From positions 1,550,001-1,614,000 of the forward strand of contig OZ251240.1 in the NCBI GenBank assembly GCA_965240325.2: a stretch of 64,000 nt of DNA. Reading direction: 5' to 3'. The position numbers and the translations under genes are program-made. The notes under the pieces are model-generated. The model saw only the letters and a list, made by a program, of their open reading frames with translations. It was not told where the DNA came from and did not search any database. Shown one piece after another: positions 35,302 to 55,648 of this stretch (positions within the stretch are counted from its first letter, which is position 1; the number at the start of each line of letters is the position of its first letter). The DNA comes from Rebecca billardiae RCC1528 (taxonomy: Eukaryota; Protista; Haptophyta).

Positions 35302-35674
35302 GCCTGGCACGCGGACTCGTGCGACGGTGACACGCCGCGGTCCTGCTGACGAGTGACGGCCGCGCGGGCCGTGACTGCGGACCGTACCGGTGGAGTGATG
35401 GACTCTGGCCGACGAGTGCTGATGCTCAGTAGTGCGAATGATGATTTCACGCTCTAGAGCGGCATGCGTCGTGCGCCCCGAACAGGTCGACGCTGTCAAT
35501 CGGGCGTATATCCTGGCACCGTGCTCAGCATCTAGATGAGTGAGCGGAAATCCGCCGATGCAGGGGGCGGCCTGCACGCCGCGTGCGTCCTGTGAAAATA
35601 TCGGGGGAACGAAATAAATTAAATGCGAATTCCGGCGAATAGGGCCACCAACACGGGTTCAAACGGGCGTGGCG

Positions 35675-36999
35675 ATGGCCGACGACGCCGGGTGCGTGAA
35701 GAGGCGCCTGTCGCTCTCGCTCAAGAAGCGGAGGCGACGAGGCGACGCGGCGGCGGCGGTGGCGGGCGCCGACGTCGCCGCCACACGCGCATCCGCCCCG
35801 TGCGCGCCGCCCCGCGCCGACGACGATGGCGGCGTCGCGGCGTGCACGCCGCACGCCCGAGCGGCGGCGAGCCTGGCGCCGCCGCCGTCGCCGCCGCTCG
35901 AGCTCTCCGCGGGCCCCGGCGCAGCCGTCGCGCGCGAGCGTGCGGAGGGGGTGGCCGCGCTGCCCTGCCCCGTGTGCTCCCTCGACCTCGGCCCCATGCC
36001 CGTCGAGCAGCGCACCGAGCACACCAACGAGTGCCTCGACAGCGCGGCCGAGCGCGCGGCGCCGGCGCCGCCGACGTCGTGCGAGCGAGCGAGCGGCCGG
36101 GCGGAGGGCGTGCCCGCGGAGTGCGCGTGCGTCGTCTGCGCCGTCGACCTCGGCGGCTACTCGCTCGCGCGCCGCATGGCGCACATCGAGCAGTGCCGGC
36201 GCGAGCGCGACGCGCATGCGGCCGCAGAGCGCGCGCGCGAGCTGCGCGGCGCCCTGGCGGCGCTCGTGCCGCCCGCGCCGCCCCCCCCGGCGGTGGACGG
36301 CGGGCGCGCTGAGGCGGGCGTGGCGCACACCGCCGCGCCGCGCGCCGAGGGCCCCGCCGCCGCGCCGCGCACGGCGCTCGACGAGCTGATGCGCGCGGCG
36401 CGCGCCGGCACGCTCAGTCCCCTGCGGCCAAACGGGCGGCGCGTCGGCGCGGGCGGCGCGGCGCGGACGCCGCCGGCGGAGCCCGCGGACGCGTTCGCCG
36501 CGCTGATGCGCGGGAGCGCGTGCGCGGCGAAGAAGGGGGCGCCGCCGCCGGGCGCTGGCGCCGCGCCGCGCGGCCGCGGCGGCGGCCGCGGCGGCGGCCG
36601 CGGCGGCCGCGGCCGCTGGCTGTTCCGAGCGCCGCGCGGCGCGGGCAGCGGCTGGGTGCCTCCGAGCAAGCGCGTCGACGGCACGCCGTTCGTGGTCGAC
36701 GGGTTCCAGTGGGCGCACGGCGGGTGCGCGGACTACTTCCTCACCCACTTCCACGCCGACCACTACGGCGGGCTCAGCCGCGCGCTGCTCGAGCGGCCCG
36801 AGCTCGCGCGCGCGCGCGTGTACTGCACCACGCCCACTGCGGCACTCGTGCAGCTACGGCTGGGCGTGCCGGCCGCTCGGCTGGTGTGCCTGCCGCTGGG
36901 CGAGGCGGTGGCGGTGCGCGAGACGGGGGTGCGCGTCACCGCGCTCGAGGCCAACCACTGCCCCGGCGCCGCGCTGCTGCTCTTCGAGCTGCCCGCCGA

Positions 37000-37033
<34 letters not shown>

Positions 37034-37855
37034 AGCGCGCCACTTGCCGAGCCGGCCGCGGCGCCGCGCGTCGCGGTGCTCCACACGGGCGACATGCGCT
37101 GGCAGCCGTACATGGCGCGGTACGAGGCGCTCGCGCCGTACGCCGGCGGCGGGCTGCGCACGCTCTACCTCGACACCACCTACTGCAGCCCGCACTACCG
37201 GCTGCCGTCGCAGGAGGCCGCCATCGGCGCGGTGGTCGCGTGCGCGCGCGCGCACGCCGAGAGCGCGCGCACGCTGTTTGTGTTTGGGGCCTACTCGATC
37301 GGCAAGGAGCGCGTGGTGCTCGCGGTCTCGCGCGCGCTGGGCGTGCGCATCCACGTCGACCGCGGCCGGATGCGCGTGTACGAGGCCGCGCTCGGCGCCC
37401 AGCTCGACGTGCGCGCCGCCTTCACCACCGACCCGGCCGAGAGCCGCTTCCGCGTGCTGCCGATGGGCCACTTGCGCGCGGACCGGCTGCGCGCGCTCGT
37501 GGGCGGAAGCTCGCGCTGGGCGTCGGTGCTCGCGTTCCGCCCGACGGGCTGGGCGCACCAGCGCGGCGGCGGCGGCGGCGGCGGCGCTCGCGCGCCCATG
37601 CGCGTCACGCGCCGCGGGCGCGTCACGCTGTGCGAGGTCGCCTACTCGGAGCACTCGAGCTTTGACGAGCTGCGCGCGTGCGTGCGCGCGCTGCGGCCCG
37701 CGCGCATCGTGCCGACTGTCGGCGGCGCGGACGAGGGCAAGGCGGCGGCGATGGTCGCCGCGCTGCTGCAGCAGCAGGGCGGCGAGGGCGAGGGCGCCGC
37801 CGGGCCCTTTGGACCGCGCCGCCCTGGCATCAGTAGCGCGGCCGCCGGCCTCTGA
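35675..37855 (+). CDS. DCLRE1A: DNA cross-link repair nuclease SNM1/PSO2 (MBL/beta-CASP) with two UBZ-like zinc fingers
   Basis: FLTHFHADHY, ANHCPGA, LHTGD, LYLDTTY, YSIGKE, FRPTGW, YSEHSSF, IVPTV; CPVC..R..H.NECLD. Confidence 0.93.
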
Positions 37856-38805
37856 GCCGAGCTGGCGACTGCTAGCCAGTCGGCTGCGGTCCGGGTCCGG
37901 GCCATCAGTGCTGATGACTGCTGACGGACGACGACTGCGCTAAAGACCCTTCAGGAAAGGGTCGTGTCGTGGCCCCACTGCGACCGCCCGGACGAGGTCG
38001 AGGGCCGCGCGGAATAGCAGTAGATAGCCGAATAGCTCATCCGTGACTGTGCGACGTCACGCGCCGCTGTTAGTGTTGGGCCTTCGGAGCGCCGCTAGTG
38101 ATGTGAGGCCCTGGCTGGCAGCGCGTCGGAGCGCCCCATACCCACCATGCGGCCGAGTCGTACGGAGTAGCCAGCTCTCACGCCTCTCACGACAGCCTGT
38201 ATTGGCAGCCACACCGTGAGCATAACGCGGCAGCCATCGGAGCCGATCGTCATCACACACACCGTTCAAAATAGAAACATGGGAGCAGCTACGGGACGCA
38301 TCCGCCACTCGTCTCTTCTCCGTACAGTCTACAGACGTCACAGCGTTGCGTGTTGCTGCTCCGGCGGCATCAGCACGCACTCACACCTACGGCTTCGGGC
38401 GTGCAAACTGGCAAAGAGCAGCGCGTGCAAGCTGTAGTTATATTATTGCGTTTCACTGAGTTGCGCAGATCGCGGCGCGTCGGCGGTGACGACAAGGTTA
38501 AGCTAAGGTATTAATAGTGGCATAAGAGACGACGGGTGTCTGGATGACATACAGCATCGAGCATGCCGAAGCGGGCGCATGCCCTTCCAATTATTGCGGT
38601 GTCTACTTGCCCACCATCCACCCCGGCGGACGATCCGGCGATGGCCGCCGCGCGAGTCTACGCGCGCACATTACTGCTCATCAAATAATATAATAATATA
38701 ACTGCTGCGCGCTTAACTGACGCACGCGACTGATATGACGAACTTACGTCGCGTATATATCAGATATATTAACAACGTGGTATGCAACGGGCAGGCGTCA
38801 GAGTC

Positions 38806-38807
<2 letters not shown>

Positions 38808-38861
<54 letters not shown>
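38808..38861. repeat. (TA)n microsatellite
   Basis: About 27 TA units. Confidence 0.98.
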
Positions 38862-38863
<2 letters not shown>

Positions 38864-38879
38864 TAGTACTAGTTATTAT

Positions 38880-39778
38880 GGCCTGTTTTATTTCTACGAG
38901 AGCCCAACGGCGACATTCGCCAAAACGCGGTAAAATGGCGGCGGCTTGCCCGCTGGTGGTGGGTACCGGCGCGAATGCGGAGTAGTGATGGCACGTCGTT
39001 GGCGCATGTTCGTACTAGGGCGCTGAGCTGTAGCGAAGGGTGTTGCCAAGGCATGCTGCTTAGCCTTGCCATGGTGCTTCGCCATGACACAGAGGTCACT
39101 CGCAGCGCACGGCGGTGTGACGATCGCCGCGCCGCGGCGGCAAACCGAGTTGCGGGCGCGCTGCGAGCTGCAAGCACTCTGCCTTGGCTGCGTCGCGCCC
39201 ATGTCAGTTGGTGAACCAAGACTGTTGAACGACAGATGGACTGCAAACGATACCAGCTCCACTCGCTCCGCCGCCCCTTCCTTGTCGAGCGTGAGATGTT
39301 TCCGTTGCGTGCGCTCGCACTGCAGCCTGCATTTGAACGTGGTCACGGCAGGTTGGTGGGCTGGTTGCTCAGGCCTCCTCGGCGTGGATGACGGTAAAGT
39401 GCGCACCCATGACGCGCGGAAAGGCCGTGCACACGCGTCCTCGCGCATCTGGCAGGCTGCAGTCTTGGCCAAGATGATGAGAACAAGCCTGCCAGTGCCT
39501 CGCCACGCGGGCGCGAGCGCGCACAGAGATCTGGCTTCTGACCCGTGCTCTTCAGTGTACCTCGTGTGCGACGACGACGAGGCGGACGAGCGCCGCAACT
39601 GGATTCGTGCACTCACCGGTCACCGAGGAGTGCACGAATCGCATTCCTCACGCACGTGGGGGCCGCCATCGGCCGTGAGAGGTACACTGAACGGGGCGTG
39701 ACATCGATTCCCACTGGCGGGCACGGGTTTGTCGCCGTGACATAGTAAATGGAATCTGGTAGAACTATAAAACAGGCC
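38880..39778. mobile_element. Non-autonomous TIR element family B, copy 1
   Basis: TIR GGCCTGTTTTAT(TTCTAC)...(GTAGAACT)ATAAAACAGGCC with TTAT on both sides; diverged homologue in opposite orientation at 58674-59574. Confidence 0.85.
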
Positions 39779-39961: not shown

Positions 39962-42900
39962 TCACGCCGGCGCCGGCTTGGCCGGCGGCTCGAGCCGCGC
40001 GCCGCAGCCAAACGCGCGGCACACGCCGATCTTGCGCAGCTCCGAGATGAAGATCTTGACCCAAGGGTAGCCGAGCATCACGGGCAGCGCCATCAGCAGC
40101 CACGCCGCGACGAGGTACGTGAAGTCGTCCGGGTCCACGGGCACGTCGCTCACGAGCGGGAGCAGCGTCTTGTACCTGTGCGCGCGCGCGGGCGCGCGCG
40201 GCGCGCGCGCGTGAGCGTCGCCGCGTCGCCGGCCGGGCGCGCGCGCGCGACGGTCGCGCTGGCGGGCCGTGCCGCGCGCACCACTGCGCGAAGATGAGCG
40301 CGATCGCGACGAGGAAGATGCCCATCTTGATCTGCACGATCTCGGGCGGGTGGGGCAGCTCGACGCGCGTCGTGTCGATCGTCGCCTGGAAGACCGTAAT
40401 GGTCTGCACGTTGCACAGCTTGGCCTTGAGAAGCTTCCACGTCTCGTCGATGAAGACCTGCACGCCGCAGAAGGTGAAGCACAGCGCCATCTGCGTCTGC
40501 CGCCACACGTGCAGCAGCGGCCGCGCGAGCCACGGGTTGCAGTGCGGCGTGTTGAAGAGGAGGCAGTACTGCAGACCCCACACGGCCAGCTTGATCAGCC
40601 CGAGCGCGACAGGCAGCACCGGCATCGCGATCACCTTGAGCTGCACGCCGCTGCTCGGCGCGGCGCGGCGCGGGGCGGGGCGGCGCGCGTGAGCCGCTCG
40701 CGCGCTAGGCTGCGGTGCCGGCCGCGCGCGGAGGGGCCGGCCGCGGCGCGCTGTGCGCATGTGCTTTTTGGGGCTGCTTTTTGGGGGGGGGGGGGGGGGG
40801 CGCGCGGCGCGCTCTGCGGCGCACAAGGAGAAGCAGGCCATCAGGATCAGCGGGAAGCCGGAGACGTTGACCGCGAGCACGGTGGTGAAGACGGTGCGCA
40901 TCTTGAGGTCGAGCTTGCGGTTCCACAGCGGGTTGTACCGCCAGAGGATCTGCAGGTTGCCGTGCGCCCAGCGGCAGCGCTGGCGGAACGCCGAGCGGAT
41001 CGTGTCGGGCGCGAGCCCGCGCGTGAACGTGCGAGGGTAGTAGAGCGCGCGGTAGCCGGCCGTGTGCAGCCGAAGGCAGATCAGCGTGTCTTCGGTGAGG
41101 CAGTTGGTGGGGAAGCCGCCGACGGACTCGACGGCCGCGCGCGAGAAGATCGCGTTCGTGCCTGCGCGGCCGGGCGGCGCGCGGTTGGGCCGCGCGGCGG
41201 GGCGAGCTGAGCGTGTGTGCCGCGCGGCCGTGCGCTCGCCCGCCCGGCCGGGCGCGCGCGCGCGCGCGCGCGCGCGCACGCGCGCACACAGCCGCCGCGC
41301 GCACCGAGGAAGAGCGCCTGGTCCGTCGCGTCGAGCGCGGGCTCCCACGTGTCGTACATCATGTCCTGCCGGTGGCCGAGCGGGTCGAGCGGCGGCGCGT
41401 CGCCAAAGACTTGGCGCGTGGCGATGAAGGCGACCGAGCGGTCGGCGACGACGCGGAGGGGCGGCGCGGAGGGCTCGGCCGCGGCGCCCGCGCCGCCTCG
41501 GCCGTCGCGCGTCGGCGGCGTCGGCCCGCCGTCCGCGCCCGTCGTCGTCGCCGTGGTGGGCAGGTGCACCACGTGGAGCATGGCGGGGAGCATCTCCTGC
41601 ACGAAGAGGCCGTGCGGCACCATGTCGCAGTCGAAGAGGACGAAGAACTCCCAGTCGAAGCCGTGGTCTGTGCTCTGCAGCCAATGGTTCATGTTGCCCG
41701 CCTGCGCGCGGGAGGTCGGGAGGACAGGGGCGGGCGCGTCGGGTGCGCGCGCCCGTCCCGCCCTCGCGTGCGCGCGCGGCGTGCGGCGCGCGCACCTTTG
41801 CGTGCGAGTTGTCCGGCCGCCAGACCACGTCAAACCCAGGCCGCTTCTCCTCGGGCAGCCAGCCGCCCGTGTGCAGTTGGAAGCACTCGCGGTACGCCTC
41901 CAGCATCACCGCCTTGCGCGCGTCGCGCACGGGCCTGCGCGGGGGGCGGGGTGCGTGGGGTGGCGTGGGTGTTGGGGTTGGTGGTGGCGGCGTGCCAGCG
42001 CGTCAGGGCGCGCGCGCGCGCGCGCACTGGTTCTGGTTGTCGTCGAGCAGGAAGACGTGGAGCCGGCTCGGCGGGTAGACCTGACGCAGGCACGCGGCGA
42101 TCGTCTTGGCGATGATGTCGTCGGGCTCCTTGTAGCACGGCACGACGATGGCGACCTTGGGCCACTCGGACTTGGGGAAGAGGCCGCGCCGGGCGTGCGC
42201 GCGCGGCGGCTGCGCCGAGCCCGCGCCGGGCGCGGGCGCGGGCGCGGGCGCGCCGCCGCGCGGCGCGCGGCCGACGTGCGCGTCTGGGCGCGCGAGGCTC
42301 GGGTGCAGCGGCGCGAGCGCGTTGAGCGCGATGTTGTGCCGCTCCTTGGGCTCGGCCATCGTGGTGATGAAGCCGCAGAAGAAGGCGGTGAGGTAGAACG
42401 TGATGAACGAGAGCACCAGCGCCACCGGGTCGAGCGGCGCCTGGTGCCACAGCACCCACTGCTCCCACACGAACGAGCACGAGATGAGCGTGACGTGCAG
42501 GCCGGTGAGCGAGAGGTACACGTTGCGCCGGAGGTTGGAGACGACGGGGGCGTGCATGGTGAGGCGCGCGGGCAGCGTGGGCGGCGCGTGGACGGCCTTG
42601 GCCTTCCACTCCGAGAGGAAGAGCGCGTTCGACTGCTGGTGCGCCACGTACTGCTTCCGCTGCCAGAAGCCGCGCCACGCCGCCTGCAGCCGCGCGGCCG
42701 CGCGCACGCGCAGCGCTAGCACCGCCGCGTGCGCGCCGAGCGCGTGGCCCGGCTGCCCGGCGGCGGCGGCGACGTCGTCGGGGTAGGCGGCGGCGTCGGG
42801 CGCGGCGGCGGCGGCGGCGGCCTCCACCGCCGCGCGCCGCGCCTCGGGGCTCATCCGCTGCGCGTTGGCGAGCAGCAGCGCCGCCTGCCGCCGCCGGCCG

Positions 42901-45900
42901 GGCGCGGGCGCGAGCGCGGTCCGCGGCACGAACGCGAGCACGATCGGGAGGAAGCCGAGGGAGAAGACGGCGCCGACGGCGATGACGATGAACATGAGCG
43001 TCATGAGCAGCCGCATCGCCGCCCACCGCGCCCAGAGGAACGGCAGCACCACGAACAGCGTCGTCACCGCGGACGCGAGCACGGCCGAGCCGACCGACTC
43101 GATCGTCTTCACGACGCGCCGCGTCGCGGTCGCGCCGACGCGCGTCGCCATGAACTTGGAGGCGATGTGGATGTGGTAGTCGACGATGAAGCCGACGCCC
43201 ATCTGGAGCATCACGGCGGAGAGGAAGTGCAGGTGCATCGAGAAGTACTTCATCACGCCGAGGATGATCACGTTGCACAGCGCAAGCGAGAGCAGGCATA
43301 TCAGGGAGACCAGCAACGCCTCCCACACCGAGTAGCCGAGGACGAGGCCAAAGGTGACGGCGGCGGCGGCGAGGGTGCAGCGGAGGAGCGCGCGGCGCAC
43401 GTCGGCGCGCATCGTGACGTACTGCTGCAGCCCGAGCCACGACTGCGCCACCGGCGCCGCGTCGAGCGCCCCCTTGTGCGACGCGACCTCCGCCTGCACC
43501 GTGAGCATCGCGCGCAGCTCGCACTCGTGCCGCGACTCGCCGTCGGTCTCGTCGTCGTCGCACGGCGCGAGCTTGAGCGGGATGCGCAGCGCGCAGACGA
43601 CGGCGGAGGCGGCGCCGCCGGGGAGCGCGTCGACGGCGGCCGTGCTCAGCATCGCCGACGGCCCCGCCGCCAGCGCCGACGCGCAGTCTGCGCGCGCCGC
43701 CGCGCCGCCCGCGTCCGCGTCGGCGGCCGCGATCGCATCCGCGGCGCCCGCGGCGGGCGGCGGCGGCGCGGAGCGGCGCGCCCAGGCGAGGTTGGCGGCG
43801 TTGTGCTCGTGCTTCGGCTCCGTCAGGTACGCGCGCAGCGCGACGGAGAAGGCGGCGACCGCGTCGTACTCGGCGACCGCGCCGCCGCCGCCGCCGCTGC
43901 TGTGTGCTGCGGCCGCCGGCAGCGCGGCCGTCGGCGGCGGCGCGGTGCCGTTGGCGGCGGCGTACCCGTCGACGAACTGGAGGAGCCAGGGCGAGACCGA
44001 GTCGACCGCGCTCGACGCCTTCACCGCACCCACCACCTCGCGCAGCTGCGCCTGGTACCCAAACTCGTGCGCGCCGCCGCCCTTCACGTACACGTACGCC
44101 CACTCGCCCTGGTTGAAGCACTCGCGCGAGTGCGCGTCAAAATCGATCAGGTAGGAGCCCGCCTTGGCGAGGCCGGCGACGTCGATGCCGAGCGGGACCT
44201 CGCCCGCGGTGAGGTCGGTCGCGCAGTACGTGCAGATCAGCAGGATCGTCACCAGCGGGATGAACGTGTAGTGCGTGAGCACCTGCGCCCAGATCGGCGG
44301 CGTGCGCCCAAAGTAGCGCGCGAGCCGCGCGGGCGACGCCTTGGCGCCGTACCGCGCGTCGGCGTACGGCTCGGCGAAGATGGGCGGGAGCTCGGGGGCG
44401 AGGGCGCGCGCGTGCGCGGCGGCGGTGGCCGGCTCCTCGTCCTCCTCCGCCTCCGCCTCCCCCGCGCCGCCGCGCGCCGCGAGCTCGTTGAGCGCGAGCG
44501 GCGAGGGCGCGGCCGCGTGCGCGGCCGCGGCGCGCTGCGCGTCGCGCGCCGCGCGGTGGCCCGCCTCTTCGGCGGCGTAGCGCGGGCCGAGGACGAGCGC
44601 CATCGCCGCGCCGAAGACGGCGACCTGCAGCCCAAAGTCGAGCAGCGCGATCAGCGCGGAGAGCCAGCAGAACGACTGGATCGCCAGCACCGAGCTCGTC
44701 GCGCCGCCGATCACGAACACGACAAAGCTCGTGAGCGACGTGCAGAGGCACGAGATGCCCGCCGACTCGAACGCGAGCTGGATGTGCTCGAGCAGCTGCG
44801 GGCGCGAGCCGTGCGCGGCGCGGCGCACCTCGGAGAAGGCGGAGAGCAGCACGAACATGTCGTCCAGCCCGTACCCCATCGCGAGCAGCGGCGCGGCGAG
44901 CCACATCGGCGAGATGGTGAGGCCACACAGCGCCATCGCGACGAGCGCGCCCGTGATCGACAGGCAGATGGCGCAGATCTCGAGCAGCAGCAGCTGGCAC
45001 GCCTCCGAGGCGCGCAGGTTGTGGTTGCGCGCCATGTAGAGCGGCACCGCGCCGAGGATCATCGGCAGCCAGTACAGCGTGAGCACCAGGTCGTCCCAGC
45101 TCATCCCCGACAGCTCCGCGTCGTACGAGCCGGGCACGACCGAGTCGACGCGGATGTGCTCGTAGCGGCCGTGCAGCGTCGAGCGTTGGAACGCGTCGGC
45201 CCACGCGCTCGCGTTGGGGCCGGGCTGGAGCTGGTAGACGAAGCGGAGCATGCGGAAGGTGGCCATGTTCTGCGCCGGCAGCTTCTCCATGCACCCGAGG
45301 TAGTCCGCCATCGCCAGGTCCAGCCCGCCCGAGCCGGTGGCCGCGTGGATGGCCGCGCGGATCATCGGCACCGCCGCGGACATGTGCGACGGCGACGGCG
45401 CCGTGTTGTTCCACAGCGTGAAGATGGAGGAGGGGAGGCACTGCGCGCCGGGGGCGGCGCGGTAGCACACGTCCTCAAAGTCCGGGCCGGTGCGCGCGCT
45501 CGCGCCGCGCACGCTGCGCTGCGTGCGCAGCCGCTCGTCCAGCTGCACCGCCTCGATGATCTGCGGCAGTTGAGTCATCGAGTCGCCCTCGGCGGACGAG
45601 ACGATGGCGACGGCGGTGAGCGGCTCCTCGAAGAGCGAGGTGTACGCGTCGAACTGCACGGACGTGCCCTTCGGCACCCACAGCCGCGTCGAGTCCGACT
45701 CGACCACGATCCGCACCATCCCCGTCGCGAGCAGCAGCGCGCAGAGCAGCGCCGCGAGGAAGCAGCAGCCGAGCACCGCGCGCGGCCGCTCGGCGGAGAA
45801 GCGGCCGAGGCGGCCGATGAGCGAGGAGAGGCGCGGGCCGAACGGGTGCGTCGAGCGCCGCCGCCCGCCCAGCGAGCGCGGCGAGGAGAAGGGCGCGCGC

Positions 45901-46049
45901 GCGCCCGGCGGCGCGCGCGCCGGCGTCGACGCGTCGTCCGACGGCGGCGCGCCGCCGCCGCCGCCCGCCGACGACGTGGGCCCGCCGCCGGCGAGGAGGC
46001 CGTCGCCGCGGAGCTTCTCCGCGGCCGTGCTCACCCGCGCGCCGAGCAT
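39962..46049 (-). CDS. Patched/NPC1-like SSD-RND + IQ motif + cellulose-synthase-like GT2 fusion protein (~1825 aa); exons 46049-42028, 41934-41796, 41701-41305, 41161-40825, 40650-40282, 40175-39962
   Basis: RND half 1: LWVPKG, GYGLDDMFVL, AGISCLCTSLT, IQSFC. Half 2: GFIVDYHIH, VGSAVLASAVTT. IQ: LQAAWRGFWQRKQY. GT2: WPKVAIVVPCYKE, LLDD, HAKAGNMN, FDCD, LTED, QRCRW. Five GTGCG..CAG introns keep frame; 5478 nt spliced. Confidence 0.9.
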
Positions 46050-46333
46050 CGCGCCAGCCTCGAGCGCGCTTCGACCCCGCGGCCGCGCCGATGCCCAAAC
46101 GTGCGCGCCGAATACGCGCGCGTGCCCGTCGTCGTCAGCCGTGGGGCTGGCTGGCTGGCTGGCTGGCTGGGAAGATGCGCAGCAGCCTGATTCATCATGC
46201 GCACACCCCCCACCGGAAATCGTCGGCACCGTGCGCTGAAGCCAGCGGAAATCTCGGCGCGCGCGGCCGGACTCGGTCGTCCGTCCGAGGCCGAAGCCCG
46301 GACAAAGGCCGCCAGCAGCAGACAACAGCGCGC

Positions 46334-48085
46334 ATGGCGGCCGCGGTGGCACGTCGCTGCTGGCGCGCCCTCGCGCACCCCGCCGCGGGGTGCGGCCGAC
46401 GAGCCGCGCTCTCGGGCGTGGGCGGCACGCACCGAGCCCTCGCGTCGCCGCCGAACGCCTCGCCCGCCGCCGCCGCCGAGCGCGGCGCCGAGCCGGCCGC
46501 GCCGCTCCCGCCGCCCGTCGCCGCGCGCGGGCCTGCGGGCTGGGCGGACGTGCTCGCCGCGCGGCTCGCGGCGGTGGCGCACGACGACACCGCCGCGGCC
46601 GACGCGGCGCGCGCGGACACGCGCCGCGACGCCGCCGCCGCCGGCCACGCCGACGCGCCCGCGCTGCACTCCGCGCTGATCCGCTCGCTCGTGCGCGAGC
46701 AAAGGCCCGAGGCGGCGTGGGCGGCGTTCGACGCGGCGCGGCGCGAGGGCGTGCGGCACGACGCGCGCGCGCACACCGCGCTCGTGCAGGCGTGCGCGCT
46801 CACCGACGAGGTGGAGAAGGCGGAGAACATTCTCAACGCGATGCAGGCGGACGGCCTGTGGCCGCCGCCGCCCGTCGCGTGCGCGCCGCGCGCGCCGCGC
46901 GCGCGCCGCGCGCGCCGCCGCGACTCCGCCTCGGCCGCTCTGCTCACGCGCCCGCGCGCGCGCCGCGCCCCGCGCCGCGCCAGCTACGACAACCTGCTCT
47001 TCTGCTACGCCGCGCGCGCGGCCTCGCTCGGCGCGCTGCCCGCCGAGCGCAAGCGCGAGCTGCGTCGACTTTGCATCCCGACGGAACCCGAGTCGGTGGT
47101 GGAGCGCGCGCTGGGCGTGCTGCGGCGGATGCGCGCGGAGGGGCTGCACGCGAGCCCGACCACGCACCTCGCGCTCCTCCGCGTGCTCGCCGCCGCCGCC
47201 CAGCCGCGCCGCGCGCAGGCCGTGCTCCTCTGCCTGCTGCAGGCGCGCGCGCCGCTCGGCGAGGCGCACTTTGCGTGCGCGATCGACGCGTGCGGCCGCG
47301 CGGCGCGCCCGGGGCAGCCGGGCTCGGAGGAGCTGCTGGCGCAGGCGCGCGGCATCCTCGACGCGATCCCGCTCGCGCTCGGCGTGCCCGCGCCCGGCGT
47401 GCGCGCCGTGCGCGCCGTGCTGCGCGCGTACGCCACCGCGCTCCGGCTGCACCGCGCGCGCCAGTGGCTCTACTCAGGTGGGTATTCGGAGTACGGGCTG
47501 ACGCCGAGCGCGGAGTGCTACGCGGTGCTCGTGCGCATGTGCCGCGAGGCGGTGCGGCCCGACCTCGCGCTCGAGGTGCTCGCGCACGCCCGCGCCGCCG
47601 GCGTGCCCCTCTGCCCGCCCGGCGGCGGCGCGCTCGCCGCCGAGGTCGGCCGCGGCCTCCGCGCCGACCTGGCCGCGCTCGGCGCGCGCTGGGCGCTCGG
47701 CAGCGAGCTCGGCCCGGACGGCGCGGCGCGCTCGTTCGCCGCGGCGCGCGCGCTGCTGCGGCTGGGCGAGGAGGCGGCGCGCCACCCCGGGCTCGACGCC
47801 GCCGCGCGCAGCCTCGCCGACGCCGCCGCGCGCGCCGAGCGCGCCGCGCTCGCGCCCGGCGCGGCGGGCGCGGGCCGCGCGCAGCTGCTCGGCGCCGACG
47901 TCGACACGGTCGGCGGCTCGGCGCGCTCGCGGCGCTGGCTCGCGCGCGAGCTGGGCGCGGGCGGCGGCGGCGCGGAGGGCGAGCCGGGCGGGCTCGCGCC
48001 GGCGCGGCAGCCGCGCGCGCCCGAGCGGGGTGGCGGCGGCGGCGGCGGCCGCGGCGCCAGCAGCGTCGGCGGCGCCGATCGATGA
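46334..48085 (+). CDS. Pentatricopeptide repeat (PPR) protein, probably mitochondrial (in-frame intron 46879-46983)
   Basis: PPR-like helices (HTALVQACALTDEVEKAENILNAMQADG; YAVLVRMC; FACAIDAC); Arg-rich N-terminal leader; removing the intron restores PPVAYDNLLFCYA. Confidence 0.82.
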   Translation: MAAAVARRCWRALAHPAAGCGRRAALSGVGGTHRALASPPNASPAAAAERGAEPAAPLPPPVAARGPAGWADVLAARLAAVAHDDTAAADAARADTRRDAAAAGHADAPALHSALIRSLVREQRPEAAWAAFDAARREGVRHDARAHTALVQACALTDEVEKAENILNAMQADGLWPPPPVACAPRAPRARRARRRDSASAALLTRPRARRAPRRASYDNLLFCYAARAASLGALPAERKRELRRLCIPTEPESVVERALGVLRRMRAEGLHASPTTHLALLRVLAAAAQPRRAQAVLLCLLQARAPLGEAHFACAIDACGRAARPGQPGSEELLAQARGILDAIPLALGVPAPGVRAVRAVLRAYATALRLHRARQWLYSGGYSEYGLTPSAECYAVLVRMCREAVRPDLALEVLAHARAAGVPLCPPGGGALAAEVGRGLRADLAALGARWALGSELGPDGAARSFAAARALLRLGEEAARHPGLDAAARSLADAAARAERAALAPGAAGAGRAQLLGADVDTVGGSARSRRWLARELGAGGGGAEGEPGGLAPARQPRAPERGGGGGGGRGASSVGGADR

Positions 48086-48491
48086 CGATGACAAGCGGCG
48101 GCGGCGGCGCTTCTGCCGGCTGCGGCCGACGTACGCAGCGCGTCACGACTCTCACTCACCACTGTCTAGATCTAGCAGTGCCACTACTAGTAATACTGTG
48201 CGGCACCGTACATACAGCGCAGCCCATGCATACTATGATACGCCATCAATACGGCTGACGATACAGTCTGATACTTGGGACGGTCGGCCCAGTGGCCGCC
48301 AGCGACCGTTTCGATCATATCGGTCCTTCACCTAAGTTGTCCCGACGAGCTGCTGCCGCGCCGTGCTCACCGGCCAAGGACTGCCAGTGGCCGACCGGTA
48401 CAAAAGCGATGACTCGCCGGGCTGCGCCAAACCCACAGGGCCCTTCCGCTTACAATATTGGCCAACCGTCGTCGCGTCGGCCAGGACCGCG

Positions 48492-49919
48492 ATGACCTCG
48501 ATCGCGATGATGATGCCACTACCGGCGTCCGCGCGGCAGCTGACCGACCTGCCGCCCGAGCTCGTCGCGCGCATCCTCGCCCACCTCGATGGCACGCGTG
48601 ACCTCGCCGCCGCCAACGCCGCCGCTCGCCTCTTCCGCGGCGCGCTCGAGCACGCGCTGCGCGAGCGCGCGCGCGCGCGCGGCGGGCACGAGGCCGCGCT
48701 GCCGGCGAGGCTGCCCGGCGGCGCGTCCACGTGGGCGGAGGAGCTGCTCGCGCGGGAGCGTGTGCTCGAGCTCGCCCACGCCCACGCGCACGTCGTGGCT
48801 GTCGCCGCAGACCCTATGGTGGTGACTACTTGCAGCGCGTTTGTCGACGCGGATGGCGGCGTGCACACGTGCGGCGCACCGCTGGGCCATCCCGAGCTCA
48901 GCATGGAGGCGCGCGTGCGCGCGCCGACGCGCGTGGGCTCACTGGAGGCGGTGCGCGTGTGCGCAGTGGCTGCCGGCCACTACCACCTGCTCGCGCTGAG
49001 CGAGTCGGGCGCCGTGTACGCGTGCGGCAAAAACAGCTTTGGCCAGCTGGGCGTGGGCGACACGGCTGAGCGACGGGCGTTCGTGCAGGTGGTGGCGCTG
49101 GGTGCGGAGCTCGTCGTCGGCATTTGCGCCGGCGACGGGCGCAGCCTCGCGCTCACGACTGCTGGCGTGGCGTACAGCTGGGGCCATAACGAATACGGCA
49201 AGCTCGGCCACGGCGACACGGAGCACCGGCTGGAGCCGACGCGCATCGGGGCGCTGGACGGCGTGCGCGTGGGCGGTGTGTCCGCGGGCGGTATGCACAC
49301 GCTGCTGCTCTCGGCGTGCGGCGCCGTGTACTCGTGCGGCTGGGGCAACTATGGCCAGCTCGGCCACGGTGGCCAGCAGGATCAGCACACGCCGAGGCGC
49401 ATCGAGGCGCTCGCTGGCGTGCGCGCCGTGCATGTGAGCGCTGGCAGTGTGCACAGCCTGGTGGCGGACGCAGCGGGCGGCGTGCACTCCTTCGGAGGCG
49501 GTCATTTGGGCGTGCTCGGCCACGGCGACGAGGTGAGTCGCCGTATGCCCACGCGCATCGAAGCGCTGGCTGGTGTGCGTGCCGTGCGCGCCCGCGCGGG
49601 CGGTTGCACCAGCGCGGTGGTGTGCGCGGACGGCAGCGTGCACACGTTTGGGTTCAACGACTACGGCCAGCTGGGGCTGGGGGACCGAGTGCATCGCACG
49701 CTGCCCGAGCGGGTGGAGGGGCTCGTGCATGCGCGCGTGGTCGACTGCTCGCTTGGCGATGCCCACACCTTCTACGTCACCGCGGACGGCGGCGTGCACG
49801 CGTGCGGCAGGCGTTCGTGCGCGCTCGGCCTGGGCGTGGGCGACGATGGCGGACCGCAGCCAACGCCGCAGCAGGTGGTGCAGCTGCCGCCCCTGATGCG
49901 GCGCTGTGGGCTGCGCTGA
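48492..49919 (+). CDS. F-box + RCC1-repeat (UVR8/HERC-like beta-propeller) protein
   Basis: LTDLPPELVARILAHL F-box; repeated AGxxHxL...G.VYSWG.N.YGQLGHG units. Confidence 0.93.
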   Translation: MTSIAMMMPLPASARQLTDLPPELVARILAHLDGTRDLAAANAAARLFRGALEHALRERARARGGHEAALPARLPGGASTWAEELLARERVLELAHAHAHVVAVAADPMVVTTCSAFVDADGGVHTCGAPLGHPELSMEARVRAPTRVGSLEAVRVCAVAAGHYHLLALSESGAVYACGKNSFGQLGVGDTAERRAFVQVVALGAELVVGICAGDGRSLALTTAGVAYSWGHNEYGKLGHGDTEHRLEPTRIGALDGVRVGGVSAGGMHTLLLSACGAVYSCGWGNYGQLGHGGQQDQHTPRRIEALAGVRAVHVSAGSVHSLVADAAGGVHSFGGGHLGVLGHGDEVSRRMPTRIEALAGVRAVRARAGGCTSAVVCADGSVHTFGFNDYGQLGLGDRVHRTLPERVEGLVHARVVDCSLGDAHTFYVTADGGVHACGRRSCALGLGVGDDGGPQPTPQQVVQLPPLMRRCGLR

Positions 49920-53180: not shown

Positions 53181-53552
53181 TTTTTCGGTATGATGATGAT
53201 TCGGCATCATGCGGGTGAGTGGTCTCATCAGTCTGTGGTACGGTACTAGTGTAGTTAGTACTCTGAGTAGTATCCGCCTATATCCGGACGCCAATCCGAA
53301 CTGTCACCATCAATTGCTCATTTATTTATCATTTGCCGGACCCAGTGGCGATGAACGAGGCTTGCTTCGTCAAGACAAGTCAGGGCTAAACTTTACTCAA
53401 TACTGGCGACGAGTGGCGGAGCCGCGCTGATGATCAGTACTAGTAGCAGTGAACTGCACAGGCGCGGCGCCGCTTATATCCCGCCCCGCAGAGTCGGATT
53501 GATGACCGCCCGATCACGGTTAACCGCGGATCCTGAGCGTGTGTCTGCTGTG

Positions 53553-55648
53553 ATGCCGACGTCCCGACCGCCCGCGTCGCTCACCGCCTTGGTCCTGGCG
53601 CTGCTCGCAGCGTGCCTCGCGGTCCCGGCCGCCTGCTTCGAGTTCGCCATGGGCGGCTGCGGCGGCCCCGCGTGCGCCATCCTCGGCACGGGCGAGACCA
53701 AGTGCTGGGGGACAGGCACGTACGGACGGCACGGCCTCGAGGACACCGAGAACCGCGGCGGCCAGCCCGGCGAGATGGGCAACAACCTGACGGCGGTCGA
53801 CCTGGGCACGGGGCGCACGGTGAAGCAGCTCTACTCGACGATGGAGGAGAGCGCCTGCGCGCTCCTCGACAACGGCGACTTCAAGTGCTGGGGCAGTGCG
53901 AGGAACGGCCGCCTCGGGACCGGCGACACCGTCGACCGAGGCGACGTCAATGGCACGATGGGCGACAGGCTGCCGGCCATCGAGCTGCCGTCCGGCACGG
54001 CCGTCGTGAAGGCGGCCGTCGGCGAGAAGGCGCGGTGCCTCCTCCTCGACGACACCACCACCCGATGCTTCGGCTATGCGAAGTGGCTCGGCCTCGGCCT
54101 GGCCTCCGCAACCACGCAGAGCGTCGGCGACGACCCGCGCGAGATGGGCAACAACCTGACGGCCATCGACTTTGGGGCGGGGCGATACGCCGTGGACATC
54201 TACGCCGGCACGGCTGCGTTCTGCGCCATCCTCGACGACCGGTCCCTCAAGTGCTGGGGCGACAACCCGAAAGGCAATCTCGGCTACGACGATCGCAACG
54301 ACCGCGGCGCGGACGTGAGACCAGGGTGCGCCACCTGCCATCTCATGGGCGACACGCTCCCGGCCGTCAACCTGGGCAGGAACTGGACGGTGAAGAGGAT
54401 GGAGCTCTCCCAGGTGCACACCTGCGCGATCCTCGACAACGGCGGTCTCAAGTGCTGGGGGGAGGGCTGCGACGGCGGGCTCGGCTACGAAGACGGCCAA
54501 GATCGCGGCGACGGGTGGGACGGCGACTTCATGGGCGACAGGCTGCCCTTCGTCGACCTGGGCAAGAACAGGACGGCCGTCGCGCTGAGCCTCGCGGCGC
54601 CCTCCTGTGGCACGACGTGCGTGCTGCGCGACGACGGCTCGTACGTGTGCTGGGGCGACAACACGTACGGCATTCTCATGACTGGCGACACCAAGGAACG
54701 CGGCGACGAGCCGGGGCACATGGGCGACGCCCTCCAGCCCATCTACCTGGGCAGGCACCCGTCCGACCCGAGCGGGCGCAACCGGACGGTCTGCAAGTTC
54801 GAGATGGGCGAGGAGACCAACTGCGTGCTCATCGACGACTGCACCTTCGCGTGCGTCGGCGGCTGGGAGCACCTCGCCCAGGGCGACCAGGTGAACCGCG
54901 GCGGCGTGCCGGGCGAGCTCGGCGACGGCCTGCTGCCCATCGACCTGGGCGACGGCGCCCTCAGCAAGTGCCGATCGGGTGAGGATCTGTGCTTCCTGCA
55001 GGCGTTCCAGGACTCACCGCCACCGTCCCCGCCGAGCCCGCCGCCGGACCCGCCGGGCCCACCGCCCTCGCCGCCGCCGCAGCCGCCGCCGAGCCCGCCG
55101 CCGAGCGCGCCGCCGTCGCAGCCGCCGCCGAGCCCGCCGTGGAGCCCACCGCCGCCCAGCTCGCCGCCGCCCAGCCCGCCGCCCAGCCCGCCGCCCAGCC
55201 CGCCGCTGCCGCCGTCGCCGCCGCCGAGCCCGCCGCCGCCACTGGAGCCACTGCCGCCGCCGTCCCCGCCGCCGCTGCCGCCGCCCACGCCGCCGCCGAG
55301 CCCGCCGCCGCCGCCGCCGCCGAGCCCGCCGCCCGCGCCGCCGCCGAGCCCGCCGCCAGCGCCGCCGCCGCTGCCGCCGCCGCCGCCGCCACCGTCGCCG
55401 CCGCCGCCATTCGCATGCGGGTCGATGTGCTTCTTCACGGTGCGCGCCACCGCCGCGCGCCACCGCGCGCCCTCGTGCCCGCCGCCTGCTCTGCGCAGTC
55501 CGCCGCTATGCTCTGCTGCACTGCGCGCAACTCTGCGCGAGCTGCGCGCGAGGTGCGCCTACATCACCTCCCGCGCGGCGTGTGTGTGCGCCCGCAGGTG
55601 CTCGCCTCCCTGTACAGGGTGGGGTGCGGCATCCTAGGCCTGTGCTGA
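53553..55648 (+). CDS. Secreted RCC1-like (KCWG-type) repeat protein with extensin-like SP(n) stalk (intron 55440-55597)
   Basis: Signal peptide LTALVLALLAACLAVPAA; repeats C.ILD....KCWG....G.LG..D..DRG...MGD.LP.VDLG; PPSPPP tract; GTGCGC...CCGCAG intron gives the C-terminus FFTVLASLYRVGCGILGLC. Confidence 0.88.

What the first reader, a model, noticed from the sequence alone, without database searches (positions are those of the whole stretch)
39962..46049. Patched/NPC1-type sterol-sensing RND transporter fused via an IQ motif to a cellulose-synthase-like GT2
Seen: one stop-free exon (46049-42028) encodes a two-halved Patched/NPC1-like module, an IQ motif, two TM helices and the start of a GT2 domain (WPKVAIVVPCYKE...LLDD). 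The fusion therefore does not depend on splice prediction. Five canonical introns then rebuild HAKAGNMN, FDCD, LTED and QRCRW plus C-terminal TM helices. The ~130-aa linker has coding-like composition and lacks the AT-richer character of true intergenic DNA here. Established: D,DxD,TED,QxxRW define processive beta-glycan synthases such as BcsA/CesA; SSD-RND proteins move sterols or lipids; a sterol-glucoside primer has been proposed for plant CesA. Inference: a single-chain machine coupling sterol/glycolipid transport or sensing to beta-glucan polymerisation, possibly for scales or extracellular polysaccharide. I do not know of this architecture being described.
Basis: partly seen in the sequence, partly recalled or inferred. 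Interest (0 to 1): 0.93.

Follow-up and report, generated by a model that had tools for sequence, protein, structure and literature searches.

The report
Patched-type transporter fused to cellulose-synthase-like enzyme
A GC-rich alga (apparently a pavlovophyte haptophyte) has one real gene that joins a Patched/NPC1-type lipid transporter to a complete cellulose-synthase-like sugar polymerase, a combination I found in no paper, which could make the long-suspected link between sterols and cellulose-type synthesis testable.

Summary
On the minus strand, six exons (46049-39962) joined by five GT..AG introns give an 1825-aa protein. It has a 12-TM Patched/NPC1-family RND module, a cytosolic linker with an IQ-like helix, a two-TM hairpin, a GT2 catalytic domain with DD, HAKAGN, DCD, TED and QRCRW, and C-terminal TM helices.

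The fusion is not a chance open frame.
- GC3 stays at 0.94-1.00 in one frame through the linker.
- Two full-length relatives carry both halves on intron-free contigs: an MMETSP transcript of 1817 aa and a Logan contig of 1869 aa. They align collinearly across every splice junction.
- An environmental genomic contig has the junction in one exon, and Pavlovales sp. CCMP2436 has the halves collinear.

The GT2 half is closest to BcsA and plant CesA by sequence and by fold. The RND half is closest to NPC1 and PTCH1, and it keeps the TM4 and TM10 acidic residues.

In the searched parts of the 5.8- and 1.84-billion-protein sets, only this small clade shows the architecture. No paper describing it was found.

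The coupling of the two halves, the polymer made and calmodulin control are all untested. No RNA-seq run could be listed. Another scan note reports a second such fusion elsewhere in this genome; I did not check it.

The parts
39962..46049 (-). Whole coding region of the fused gene. Six exons: 46049-42028, 41934-41796, 41701-41305, 41161-40825, 40650-40282, 40175-39962 (stop included). 1825 aa.
   Evidence: Splice model and translation. Collinear with 1817-aa and 1869-aa relatives, with no gaps at the junctions.
42903..45794 (-). Patched/NPC1-family RND module, residues 86-1049. Order: TM1, extracytosolic loop 1 (about 110-320), TM2-6, cytosolic loop, TM7, extracytosolic loop 2 (about 614-886), TM8-12.
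   Evidence: Hydropathy. Both TM bundles align in order to NPC1, NPC1L1, PTCH1 and Dispatched.
44580..45089 (-). Sterol-sensing domain (TM2-6, residues 321-490). Includes the TM4 motif GLDDMF with D396 and D397.
   Evidence: Pfam PF12349 1.7e-16 and PF02460 6.5e-16. 77-84% identical to relatives, among the best conserved parts of the protein.
42903..43394 (-). Second RND TM bundle (TM8-12, residues 886-1049). Includes the TM10 motif GFIVDYHIH with D957.
   Evidence: Aligns to NPC1 1078-1252, with D957 opposite the NPC1 Glu. 83-84% identical to relatives.
42555..42902 (-). Cytosolic linker, residues 1050-1165. It starts with a conserved LAPAPGRRRQA stretch, followed by a stretch of variable length.
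   Evidence: GC3 0.98-1.00 in frame. Indels between four lineages all preserve the frame.
42648..42689 (-). IQ-like basic helix, residues 1121-1134 (LQAAWRGFWQRKQY).
   Evidence: Fits the [FILV]Qxxx[RK]Gxxx[RK]xx[FILVWY] consensus. Pfam IQ scores 17.5 bits, below the 20.3 cut-off. The WRG(F/Y)WxR(K/R)Q-aromatic core is conserved but the Q is not. It is helical in the orthologue model.
42345..42554 (-). Two-TM hairpin (TM13-14, residues about 1166-1235). It precedes the conserved ERHN..NALAPLHPSL segment.
   Evidence: Hydropathy, conservation, and helices H56-91 and H96-118 of the orthologue model.
40920..42182 (-). GT2 (GT-A) catalytic domain, residues about 1290-1600, spanning introns 1-3. 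Motifs: DD 1336-1337, HAKAGN 1385-1390, DCD 1411-1413, TED 1542-1544, QRCRW 1580-1584.
   Evidence: Pfam PF13632 3.7e-16 on exon 4. BcsA matches at 6e-16 for exon 4 and 3e-25 for the orthologue half. Motif columns compared.
40040..40919 (-). C-terminal membrane region, residues about 1601-1800. About five TM helices, interface helices and a modified gating-loop motif (VFQATIDTTR). Spans introns 4-5.
   Evidence: Hydropathy. The orthologue model aligns with BcsA and CesA over 510-680 columns, TM region included. Gating-loop columns compared.

Best explanation
This is one genuine gene of a pavlovophyte-type haptophyte, and it encodes a single membrane protein of about 19 TM helices.

Shown:
- The N-terminal 1050 residues are a Patched/NPC1-family RND module with both five-helix bundles. 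The acidic residues that drive cation-coupled transport in this family are intact (D396 and D397 in TM4, D957 in TM10).
- The C-terminal 650 residues or so are a BcsA/CesA-type membrane-integrated family-2 glycosyltransferase. All catalytic motifs are present, with two TM helices before the catalytic domain and about five after it.
- The two halves are joined in frame by a cytosolic linker, which is conserved as protein in several lineages.

Inferred:
- The GT2 half polymerises a beta-linked glycan from a UDP-sugar on the cytosolic face and threads it through its own TM channel. A cellulose-like beta-glucan is the most likely product.
- The RND half uses a cation gradient to move or sense a sterol-like lipid, or a glycolipid, at the same membrane site. 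This would set the lipid environment of the synthase or handle a lipid-linked partner of it.
- The IQ-like basic helix between the halves may give Ca2+/calmodulin control in place of the bacterial PilZ domain, which is absent.

Confidence is about 0.95 for the architecture and about 0.4 for functional coupling of the two halves as described. The figure given for this explanation is for the whole statement.
For: - Gene model: 6 exons, 5 GT..AG introns, one frame, 1825 aa.
- Coding signal: GC3 is 0.94-1.00 in frame throughout exon 1, linker included.
- Relatives: full-length relatives carry Patched, SSD and GT2 Pfam domains on uninterrupted ORFs. One is an MMETSP transcript contig and one a Logan contig. 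A further 1863-aa member exists.
- Collinearity: the alignment is collinear over all splice sites, and the linker motifs are conserved.
- Other genomes: an environmental genomic contig has RND TM10, the linker and GT2 up to HAK in one HSP (E 3e-99). Pavlovales sp. CCMP2436 has the halves collinear on one strand.
- RND half: NPC1 5e-12 and PTCH1 3e-10, each with two stretches in order; no bacterial RND below E = 1. The TM bundles are the best conserved parts, at 77-84% identity against 71-72% for the GT2 domain.
- GT2 half: BcsA 3e-25 by sequence. The orthologue model has pLDDT 76 and pTM 0.78. Foldseek ranks BcsA first (1e-21), then plant CesA, CslF6, hyaluronan synthases and chitin synthases.
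- Motifs: TED and a G-T motif of the CesA/BcsA type, with D, DxD and QxxRW in register with 70 relatives.
- Topology: after TM12 and after TM14 the chain is cytosolic, which is where the GT-A domain must sit.
Against: - No transcript or protein data from this organism could be obtained, because no sequencing run was listed. An internal start site or proteolytic separation of the halves is therefore not excluded.
- The RND half could not be modelled (pLDDT 37), and the full-length protein exceeds the fold tool's size limit. Physical contact between the two TM bundles is untested.
- One divergent relative (L004) has TM4 DD changed to DG and the TM10 Asp changed to Arg, yet keeps all GT2 motifs. 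The RND half may therefore act without transport in some members.
- Several synthase motifs deviate. DDG is DDN, QTPQxF is ATRQVF, and the gating loop FxVTxK has a 3-residue insertion with V replaced.
- The IQ hit is below Pfam's cut-off, and its Q is not conserved.
- Sugar and linkage cannot be read from the sequence.
Confidence: 0.5

Rival explanations
1. The fusion is real, but the RND half is not a transporter. It serves as a sterol- or lipid-sensing regulatory and anchoring domain, as the SSD does in SCAP or HMG-CoA reductase. It tunes, localises or oligomerises the synthase according to membrane sterol content.
For: The environmental relative L004 has lost two of the three acidic relay residues but keeps every GT2 motif. 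SSDs are known sensors (established knowledge). The extracytosolic loops are less conserved, at 46-62% identity, than the TM bundles.
Against: The window protein and its two full-length relatives keep the full 12-TM, two-bundle RND layout with DD in TM4 and D in TM10. SSD-only sensors lack that layout. TM8-12, which a pure SSD sensor does not need, is as conserved as TM2-6.
Confidence: 0.2
2. The fusion is real, but the GT2 half does not make cellulose. It could make another polymer (beta-1,3-glucan, mixed-linkage glucan, or a mannan-, chitin- or hyaluronan-like chain). Alternatively it could make a short lipid-linked oligosaccharide, such as a steryl oligoglycoside, which the RND half then exports as MmpL-type RND proteins export glycolipids.
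For: Identity to any characterised synthase is only about 30%. The nearest relatives are a mix of uncharacterised algal, fungal, oomycete and bacterial GT2s. The motifs DDN, ATRQVF and the altered gating loop are family-specific. Pavlova lutheri contains glucosylated sterols, pavlovols among them (PMC6315552).
Against: Sequence and fold searches both rank BcsA and CesA above CslF6, hyaluronan synthases and chitin synthases. The motif is TED, as in the cellulose synthase group, not the EDR of chitin and hyaluronan synthases (established knowledge). QxxRW plus a multi-helix channel fits a processive, translocating enzyme. Known sterol glucosyltransferases belong to GT1, not GT2 (established knowledge).
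Confidence: 0.2
3. There are two adjacent genes, or an assembly artefact, read through as one by a chance open frame in very GC-rich DNA.
For: Long spurious ORFs are common here, for example the antisense 1153-aa ORF. No reads from this organism could be laid on the junction.
Against: GC3 is about 1.0 in one frame across the junction. The linker is conserved as protein. The same junction occurs in one uninterrupted ORF in three transcript-type contigs and in one exon of another genome, with independent in-frame indels. There is no GC dip of the kind seen in real intergenic DNA, and no conserved internal Met.
Confidence: 0.02
4. One precursor is translated and then cleaved in the variable linker, giving a separate RND protein and a separate synthase that may or may not stay together.
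For: Two low-complexity linker stretches of variable length (residues 1051-1112 and 1263-1287) are poorly conserved, at 24-42% identity. In the orthologue model they have low confidence.
Against: No protease site or precedent was identified. The frame is kept through independent indels, and selection for co-translation alone would also explain that. There is no direct evidence either way.
Confidence: 0.08

Closest known systems
Bacterial cellulose synthase BcsA (Rhodobacter sphaeroides 4hg6/4p00/5ej1; E. coli 9b8v/7lby)
   Same: It is the best sequence match (3e-25 for the orthologue half, 6e-16 for the window's exon 4) and the best fold match (Foldseek 1e-21). DD, HAKAGN, DxD, TED and QxxRW are in register, and TM helices flank a cytosolic GT-A domain.
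   Different: There is no PilZ domain and no BcsB partner domain. Two TM helices precede the GT domain, not four. DDG is DDN, QTPHFF is ATRQVF, and the gating loop is altered. A 12-TM RND module is fused to the N-terminus.
Plant cellulose synthase CesA and CslF6 (6wlb, 7d5k, 8vht, 8g27, 8dqk)
   Same: The layout is 2 + about 5 TM helices around the GT domain. A G-T motif (LGTNAIF against VGTGCVF) is present, and fold matches run over 640-680 columns.
   Different: Sequence similarity is weaker (E 1e-5). No RING/zinc-finger N-terminus and no plant-conserved or class-specific regions were detected.
NPC1 / NPC1L1 / PTCH1 / Dispatched (eukaryotic sterol-transporter branch of the RND superfamily)
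   Same: The arrangement is 1+5+1+5 TM helices. The SSD and the second bundle both align, and the acidic residues in TM4 and TM10 are in register.
   Different: It is very divergent (E 1e-9 to 1e-12). It has no NPC1 N-terminal sterol-binding domain. The extracytosolic loops match no Pfam family and could not be modelled. No known member carries a glycosyltransferase.
Bacterial BcsA-BcsB single-chain fusions and TPR-BcsA fusions
   Same: They are precedent for a cellulose-synthase-type GT2 fused to a large partner with extracytosolic domains. They are the only other long proteins found with a related GT2 domain.
   Different: The partner there is BcsB, PilZ or TPR, placed C-terminally or as soluble repeats. 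It is never an RND or SSD module.
Algal and oomycete CesA-like GT2s with N-terminal add-ons (Pycnococcus/Pseudoscourfieldia ankyrin-GT2, Phytophthora CesA3)
   Same: They are the nearest non-family relatives of the GT2 half, at about 32% identity and E about 1e-30. They are eukaryotic and have regulatory N-terminal extensions.
   Different: Their extensions are soluble domains such as ankyrin repeats, not a transporter. None of the ten checked has an RND domain.

Membership tests
BcsA/CesA-type processive GT2 (cellulose synthase superfamily) | UDP-binding acidic motifs D(D) and DxD in a GT-A domain | tested here: met
   LLDD at 1334-1337 and FDCD at 1410-1413. The columns are invariant or nearly so among 76 aligned relatives.
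BcsA/CesA-type processive GT2 (cellulose synthase superfamily) | HxKAGNxN nucleotide-binding motif | tested here: met
   HAKAGNMN at 1385-1392, rebuilt across intron 2 and in register.
BcsA/CesA-type processive GT2 (cellulose synthase superfamily) | TED catalytic base and QxxRW acceptor-binding motif | tested here: met
   LTED at 1541-1544 and QRCRW at 1580-1584. The window's exon 4 aligns to BcsA 310-412 at E 6e-16.
BcsA/CesA-type processive GT2 (cellulose synthase superfamily) | Membrane-integrated fold with a TM channel around the GT domain | tested here: met
   Tested on orthologue P0002:1100-1817 (pLDDT 76, pTM 0.78). Foldseek ranks BcsA and then CesA first over 510-680 columns. The window shows the same hydropathy pattern.
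BcsA/CesA-type processive GT2 (cellulose synthase superfamily) | Gating loop FxVTxK and the QTPQxF-type motif | tested here: inconclusive
   F and T are kept, but V is replaced by A or P. There is a 3-residue insertion, and R or N stands where K is expected. QTPQxF reads ATRQVF.
BcsA proper (bacterial) | C-terminal PilZ domain and a BcsB partner | tested here: not met
   No PF07238 or PF03170 hit in the window protein or its relatives, unlike the bacterial long relatives.
Plant CesA proper | N-terminal RING-type zinc finger | tested here: not met
   No such Pfam hit. The N-terminus is an RND module.
BcsA/CesA-type processive GT2 (cellulose synthase superfamily) | Product is beta-1,4-glucan made from UDP-glucose | not testable with these tools
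   Needs an enzyme assay and linkage analysis.
Patched/NPC1/Dispatched branch of the RND superfamily | 12 TM helices as 1+5+1+5 with two large extracytosolic loops | tested here: met
   Hydropathy. Two ordered matched stretches in NPC1, NPC1L1 and PTCH1.
Patched/NPC1/Dispatched branch of the RND superfamily | Sterol-sensing domain in TM2-6 | tested here: met
   PF12349 at 60.9 bits (cut-off 22.3) and PF02460 at 58.9 bits (cut-off 23).
Patched/NPC1/Dispatched branch of the RND superfamily | Acidic cation-relay residues in TM4 (GxxxDD) and TM10 (GxxxD/E) | tested here: met
   GLDDMF at 394-399 and GFIVDY at 953-958 lie opposite NPC1 GVDNIF and GISVEF. They are conserved in P0001 and P0002 but not in L004.
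NPC1 proper | N-terminal lumenal sterol-binding domain | tested here: not met
   TM1 starts at residue 91 after a low-complexity cytosolic stretch, and there is no NPC1_N hit.
Patched/NPC1/Dispatched branch of the RND superfamily | RND-type fold of the extracytosolic domains; sterol as substrate | tested here: inconclusive
   The AF2 model of the RND half failed (pLDDT 36.8 with a 5-sequence alignment). The substrate cannot be tested here.
IQ calmodulin-binding motif | Consensus [FILV]Qxxx[RK]Gxxx[RK]xx[FILVWY] and the Pfam threshold | tested here: inconclusive
   The window sequence at 1121-1134 fits the consensus exactly. Pfam IQ scores 17.5 bits, below 20.3. The Q is E, S or A in relatives, while the basic-aromatic core is conserved. 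Binding was not testable.

The most novel reading that the evidence does not exclude
The fusion is a natural Rosetta stone. A Patched/NPC1-type cation-driven sterol mover is mechanistically coupled to a cellulose-synthase-type polymerase in one chain. It could create the sterol-defined lipid annulus that the synthase needs, or it could deliver or remove a steryl glycoside that starts or caps the chain. Ca2+/calmodulin acting on the connecting helix would be the switch. If so, the sterol dependence of cellulose synthesis seen in plants (reviewed in PMC3355633) would reflect an ancient direct partnership that can be dissected in a single protein.
Probability: 0.25. Interest if true: 0.85.

Novelty: new variant of a known kind. 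Interest (0 to 1): 0.65.

Why it matters
Sterol-biosynthesis mutants of plants are cellulose-deficient. A sterol-glucoside primer for cellulose synthase was proposed and remains disputed (PMC3355633; PMC6315552). What has been missing is a direct physical link between sterol handling and a cellulose-type synthase.

Here evolution has joined a Patched/NPC1-family module to a complete BcsA/CesA-like synthase in one reading frame. It has kept them joined, with both halves under strong constraint, in several pavlovophyte lineages. This gives a single expressible protein in which the effect of sterols, of the RND acidic residues and of Ca2+/calmodulin on glycan synthesis can be measured.

It is also a new context for Patched-family proteins outside animals, and a candidate enzyme for the unknown cell-surface or storage glycans of Pavlovales. 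The caveat is that only the architecture is shown. The coupling itself is inference.

Tried and rejected
- Sequencing runs: two searches, one for RNA on 41900-43900 and one of any kind on 42030-43200. None was listed, so read laying was not used and there is no transcript evidence from this organism.
- AF2 of the RND half (window residues 1-1050, 5-sequence alignment): pLDDT 36.8 and pTM 0.27, unusable. No fold search was run on it.
- Full-length or two-bundle modelling: not possible, because 1825 aa exceeds the 1200-aa limit and the spliced protein has no reference.
- Metagenome scans with the junction alignment A2 and the GT2 alignment A4: the first found no relative. The second found only distant GT2s at 43% identity or less.
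- ESM Atlas look-up of P0002: only generic GT2 clusters at score 0.67, which is uninformative.
- Word-indexed search of the SSD alone: only P0002 came back. The RND half has no close relatives of comparable length that share words.
- Chance-ORF or two-gene reading: rejected (see rivals).
- Chitin or hyaluronan synthase identity: considered and ranked lower. The reasons are TED rather than EDR, and the fold ranking.
- Species identity: the 73-75% GC and the Pavlovales relatives fit Diacronema lutheri (73.25% GC, PMC8379373). The species was not established.
Full report

Yes. The minus-strand stretch 46049-42028 translates without a stop for 1340 codons. Pfam places a sterol-sensing domain (PF12349, 1.7e-16) and Patched SSD (PF02460, 6.5e-16) at residues 353-485. 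It also gives a weak IQ hit at 1116-1134 and the first 36 positions of a GT2 profile at 1297-1333.

Reading the minus strand from 42200 down to 39700 shows five GT..AG introns, all beginning GTGCGC. Joining the exons 46049-42028, 41934-41796, 41701-41305, 41161-40825, 40650-40282 and 40175-39962 gives 5478 nt in one frame with a single terminal stop. The product is 1825 aa and rebuilds HAK|AGNMN, FDCD, LTED and QRCRW.

**2. Is it more than chance?**

In DNA of about 75% GC, long ORFs are cheap. The antisense strand carries a 1153-aa ORF over the same exon, so the open frame is not evidence on its own. Three other lines are.

- Codon composition. Third-position GC is 0.94-1.00 in this frame in every 50-codon block of exon 1, including residues 1051-1300. 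GC1 and GC2 are 0.56-0.94 and 0.28-0.82.
- Base composition. There is no dip in the linker (0.70-0.81), whereas real intergenic DNA downstream falls to 0.39-0.52.
- Homology, described next.

**3. Independent support for the fusion**

A search with exon 1 found two clusters of full-length relatives, P0002 (1817 aa) and P0001 (1869 aa). Their precomputed Pfam lists hold both Patched/SSD and GT2 families, and my own scan confirmed this.

- P0002 is an MMETSP transcript on a 7.4-kb contig.
- P0001 is an uninterrupted 5.6-kb ORF on a 5.7-kb Logan contig. Since genomic copies have introns, it most likely comes from RNA.
- A third member, P0153 (1863 aa), sits in P0002's cluster.

The three-way alignment is collinear from the start Met to the C-terminus. 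There are no gaps at any of my five splice junctions, which validates the gene model.

Two further genomes agree. In an environmental genomic contig (L004), one tblastn segment (E 3e-99) runs from RND TM10 through the linker into the GT2 domain as far as HAK. In Pavlovales sp. CCMP2436 (L003, MU631904.1), RND, linker and GT2 pieces are collinear on one strand between assembly gaps.

The two variable linker stretches differ in length in every lineage, yet the frame is always kept. The two-genes or artefact reading is therefore rejected.

**4. Organism**

The only named relative is from Pavlovales sp. CCMP2436. The window's GC fits the 73.25% reported for Diacronema lutheri (PMC8379373). I treat the source as a pavlovophyte-type haptophyte and leave the species open.

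**5. Anatomy**

Hydropathy and the alignments give the following order.

| Residues | Element |
|---|---|
| 1-90 | Low-complexity cytosolic N-terminus |
| 91-109 | TM1 |
| ~110-320 | Extracytosolic loop 1 |
| 321-490 | TM2-6 (sterol-sensing domain) |
| 491-587 | Cytosolic loop |
| ~588-613 | TM7 |
| ~614-886 | Extracytosolic loop 2 |
| 887-1049 | TM8-12 |
| 1050-1165 | Cytosolic linker with the IQ-like helix (1121-1134) |
| ~1166-1235 | TM13-14 hairpin |
| ~1236-1252 | Conserved ERHN..NALAPLHPSL segment |
| 1263-1287 | Short low-complexity stretch |
| ~1290-1600 | GT-A domain |
| ~1601-1800 | About five more TM helices with interface helices |

The topology is self-consistent: the chain is cytosolic after TM12 and after TM14, which is where the catalytic domain must be.

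**6. The RND half**

Against solved structures, both TM bundles match in order.

- NPC1: 5e-12.
- NPC1L1: 7e-11.
- PTCH1: 3e-10.
- Dispatched: 1e-3.
- No bacterial RND protein came up below E = 1, and a family profile gave the same picture.

The TM4 motif GLDDMF lies opposite NPC1 GVDNIF, and the TM10 motif GFIVDYHIH lies opposite GISVEFCSH. The acidic residues used for cation coupling in this family (established knowledge for PTCH1 and RND proteins) are therefore present.

The TM bundles are the most conserved parts of the whole protein, at 77-84% identity. The GT2 domain is at 71-72% and the loops at 46-62%. This argues that the RND half is a working part and not a relic.

There is no NPC1-type N-terminal domain. 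The loops match no Pfam family, and an AF2 model from five sequences failed.

One divergent relative, L004, has DG in place of DD in TM4 and Arg in place of the TM10 Asp. Transport may not be universal in the family.

**7. The GT2 half**

The orthologue's C-terminal half matches R. sphaeroides BcsA at 3e-25 over about 300 residues. The window's own exon 4 matches it at 6e-16, with TED and QxxRW in register.

An AF2 model of P0002:1100-1817, built on 76 sequences, reached pLDDT 76 and pTM 0.78, with values above 90 in the catalytic core. Foldseek ranks BcsA first (1e-21), then plant CesA, then CslF6, hyaluronan synthases and chitin synthases. The alignments span 510-680 columns and include the membrane part.

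Column-by-column comparison shows which features are kept and which are particular to this family.

- Kept: D, HAKAGN, DxD, a G-T motif, TED and QRxRW.
- Family-specific: DDN in place of DDG, ATRQVF in place of QTPQxF, and a gating loop with F and T kept, V replaced, and a 3-residue insertion.
- Absent: PilZ, BcsB and a RING finger.

It is therefore a divergent member of the cellulose synthase superfamily. It is neither BcsA proper nor CesA proper, and its product cannot be read from the sequence.

**8. How rare is the architecture?**

An exhaustive HMMER pass over 1.84 billion representatives was run with the linker plus GT2 half. Above E 1e-33 it found only fragments of this same family. After that came GT2s of about 32% identity.

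Ten of those were scanned. They carry cellulose-synthase profiles with ankyrin or other extensions, and none has an RND domain. Named ones are Pycnococcus/Pseudoscourfieldia, Phytophthora CesA3, Chromosphaera, a fungus and bacterial BcsA.

Among long proteins (1000-3180 aa) with a related GT2 domain, only P0001 and P0002 have Patched/SSD. The rest are BcsA-BcsB, PilZ or TPR fusions.

Six literature searches found no description of such a fusion. These searches cover open-access text only.

**9. The IQ motif**

The window sequence at 1121-1134 fits the textbook IQ consensus exactly. Pfam scores it below its cut-off, and the Q is E, S or A in relatives. The WRG(F/Y)WxR(K/R)Q-aromatic core is conserved, and the segment is a long helix in the model. 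Calmodulin binding is plausible but untested.

**10. Most likely mechanism**

The architecture is shown; the rest is inferred.

- The GT2 half most likely polymerises a beta-linked glycan from a UDP-sugar and exports it through its own channel, as BcsA and CesA do.
- The RND half most likely moves or senses a sterol-like lipid or glycolipid beside it, using a cation gradient.
- The connecting helix may be a regulatory handle.

The rivals are a sensor-only RND half, a different polymer or a lipid-linked product exported by the RND half, and post-translational cleavage. They are given with the tests that would separate them.

Two facts supply context but no evidence for coupling. Pavlova lutheri makes glucosylated sterols, pavlovols among them (PMC6315552). 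Sterols are needed for plant cellulose synthesis (PMC3355633).

**11. Surroundings**

The flanking genes look unrelated to this gene's function.

- A divergent PPR-like ORF lies at 46091-48082.
- A convergent DRMBL/SNM1-like gene lies at 35669-37852.
- RCC1-repeat genes lie further upstream.

**12. Verdict**

The architectural interpretation is supported, and the functional interpretation is open.

This is a new domain combination built from two well-known machines. It is confined, as far as these searches reach, to Pavlovales. Other notes of this scan report a second Patched-GT2 fusion with a degenerate GT2 module and a GRAM-like/NPC1 fusion elsewhere in the same genome. I could not check them.

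Noticed in passing
window 42729-46190 (+): An 1153-aa antisense ORF lies opposite exon 1, and several other ORFs over 300 aa occur in wrong frames. They are artefacts of about 75% GC and show that ORF length alone is not evidence in this genome.
   Followed up: partly
window introns 41935-42027, 41702-41795, 41162-41304, 40651-40824, 40176-40281: All five introns begin GTGCGC and end CAG. They are 93-174 nt long and carry (GC)n runs. Intron 4 holds a C15 run followed by A-rich words near 40775-40800.
   Followed up: no
L004 255-280 and 2545-2600 (environmental relative, JGI 3300036591): This divergent family member has TM4 DD changed to DG and the TM10 Asp changed to Arg. It keeps AGNMNHW, FDCDMVPH, LTED and RQRSRW. 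Its RND half may be transport-dead while its synthase half is intact.
   Followed up: partly
window 46091-48082 (+): A divergently oriented ORF has weak PPR-repeat hits. It starts within about 50-300 nt of the fusion gene's start, so the two may share a promoter region (46050-46340).
   Followed up: no
window 35669-37852 (+): A DRMBL (SNM1/Artemis-type DNA-repair metallo-beta-lactamase) gene is convergent with the fusion gene. GC falls to 0.39 at 38650-38950 between the two.
   Followed up: no
window 48363-49916 (+) and 53430-55634 (+): Two RCC1-repeat (RLD) genes lie upstream of the locus.
   Followed up: no
same genome, other pieces (scan notes s1-346352, s1-338875): First-reader notes report a second Patched/NPC1-GT2 fusion with a degenerate GT2 module, and a GRAM-like/NPC1-Patched fusion. 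If real, Patched-family fusions have diversified in this genome.
   Followed up: no
L003 (Pavlovales sp. CCMP2436, MU631904.1 59085-79426): The orthologous gene is annotated there only as small fragments, for example the 113-aa KAJ1618787.1. The locus has about 8 kb of N gaps and more introns, so the fusion is invisible in that annotation.
   Followed up: partly
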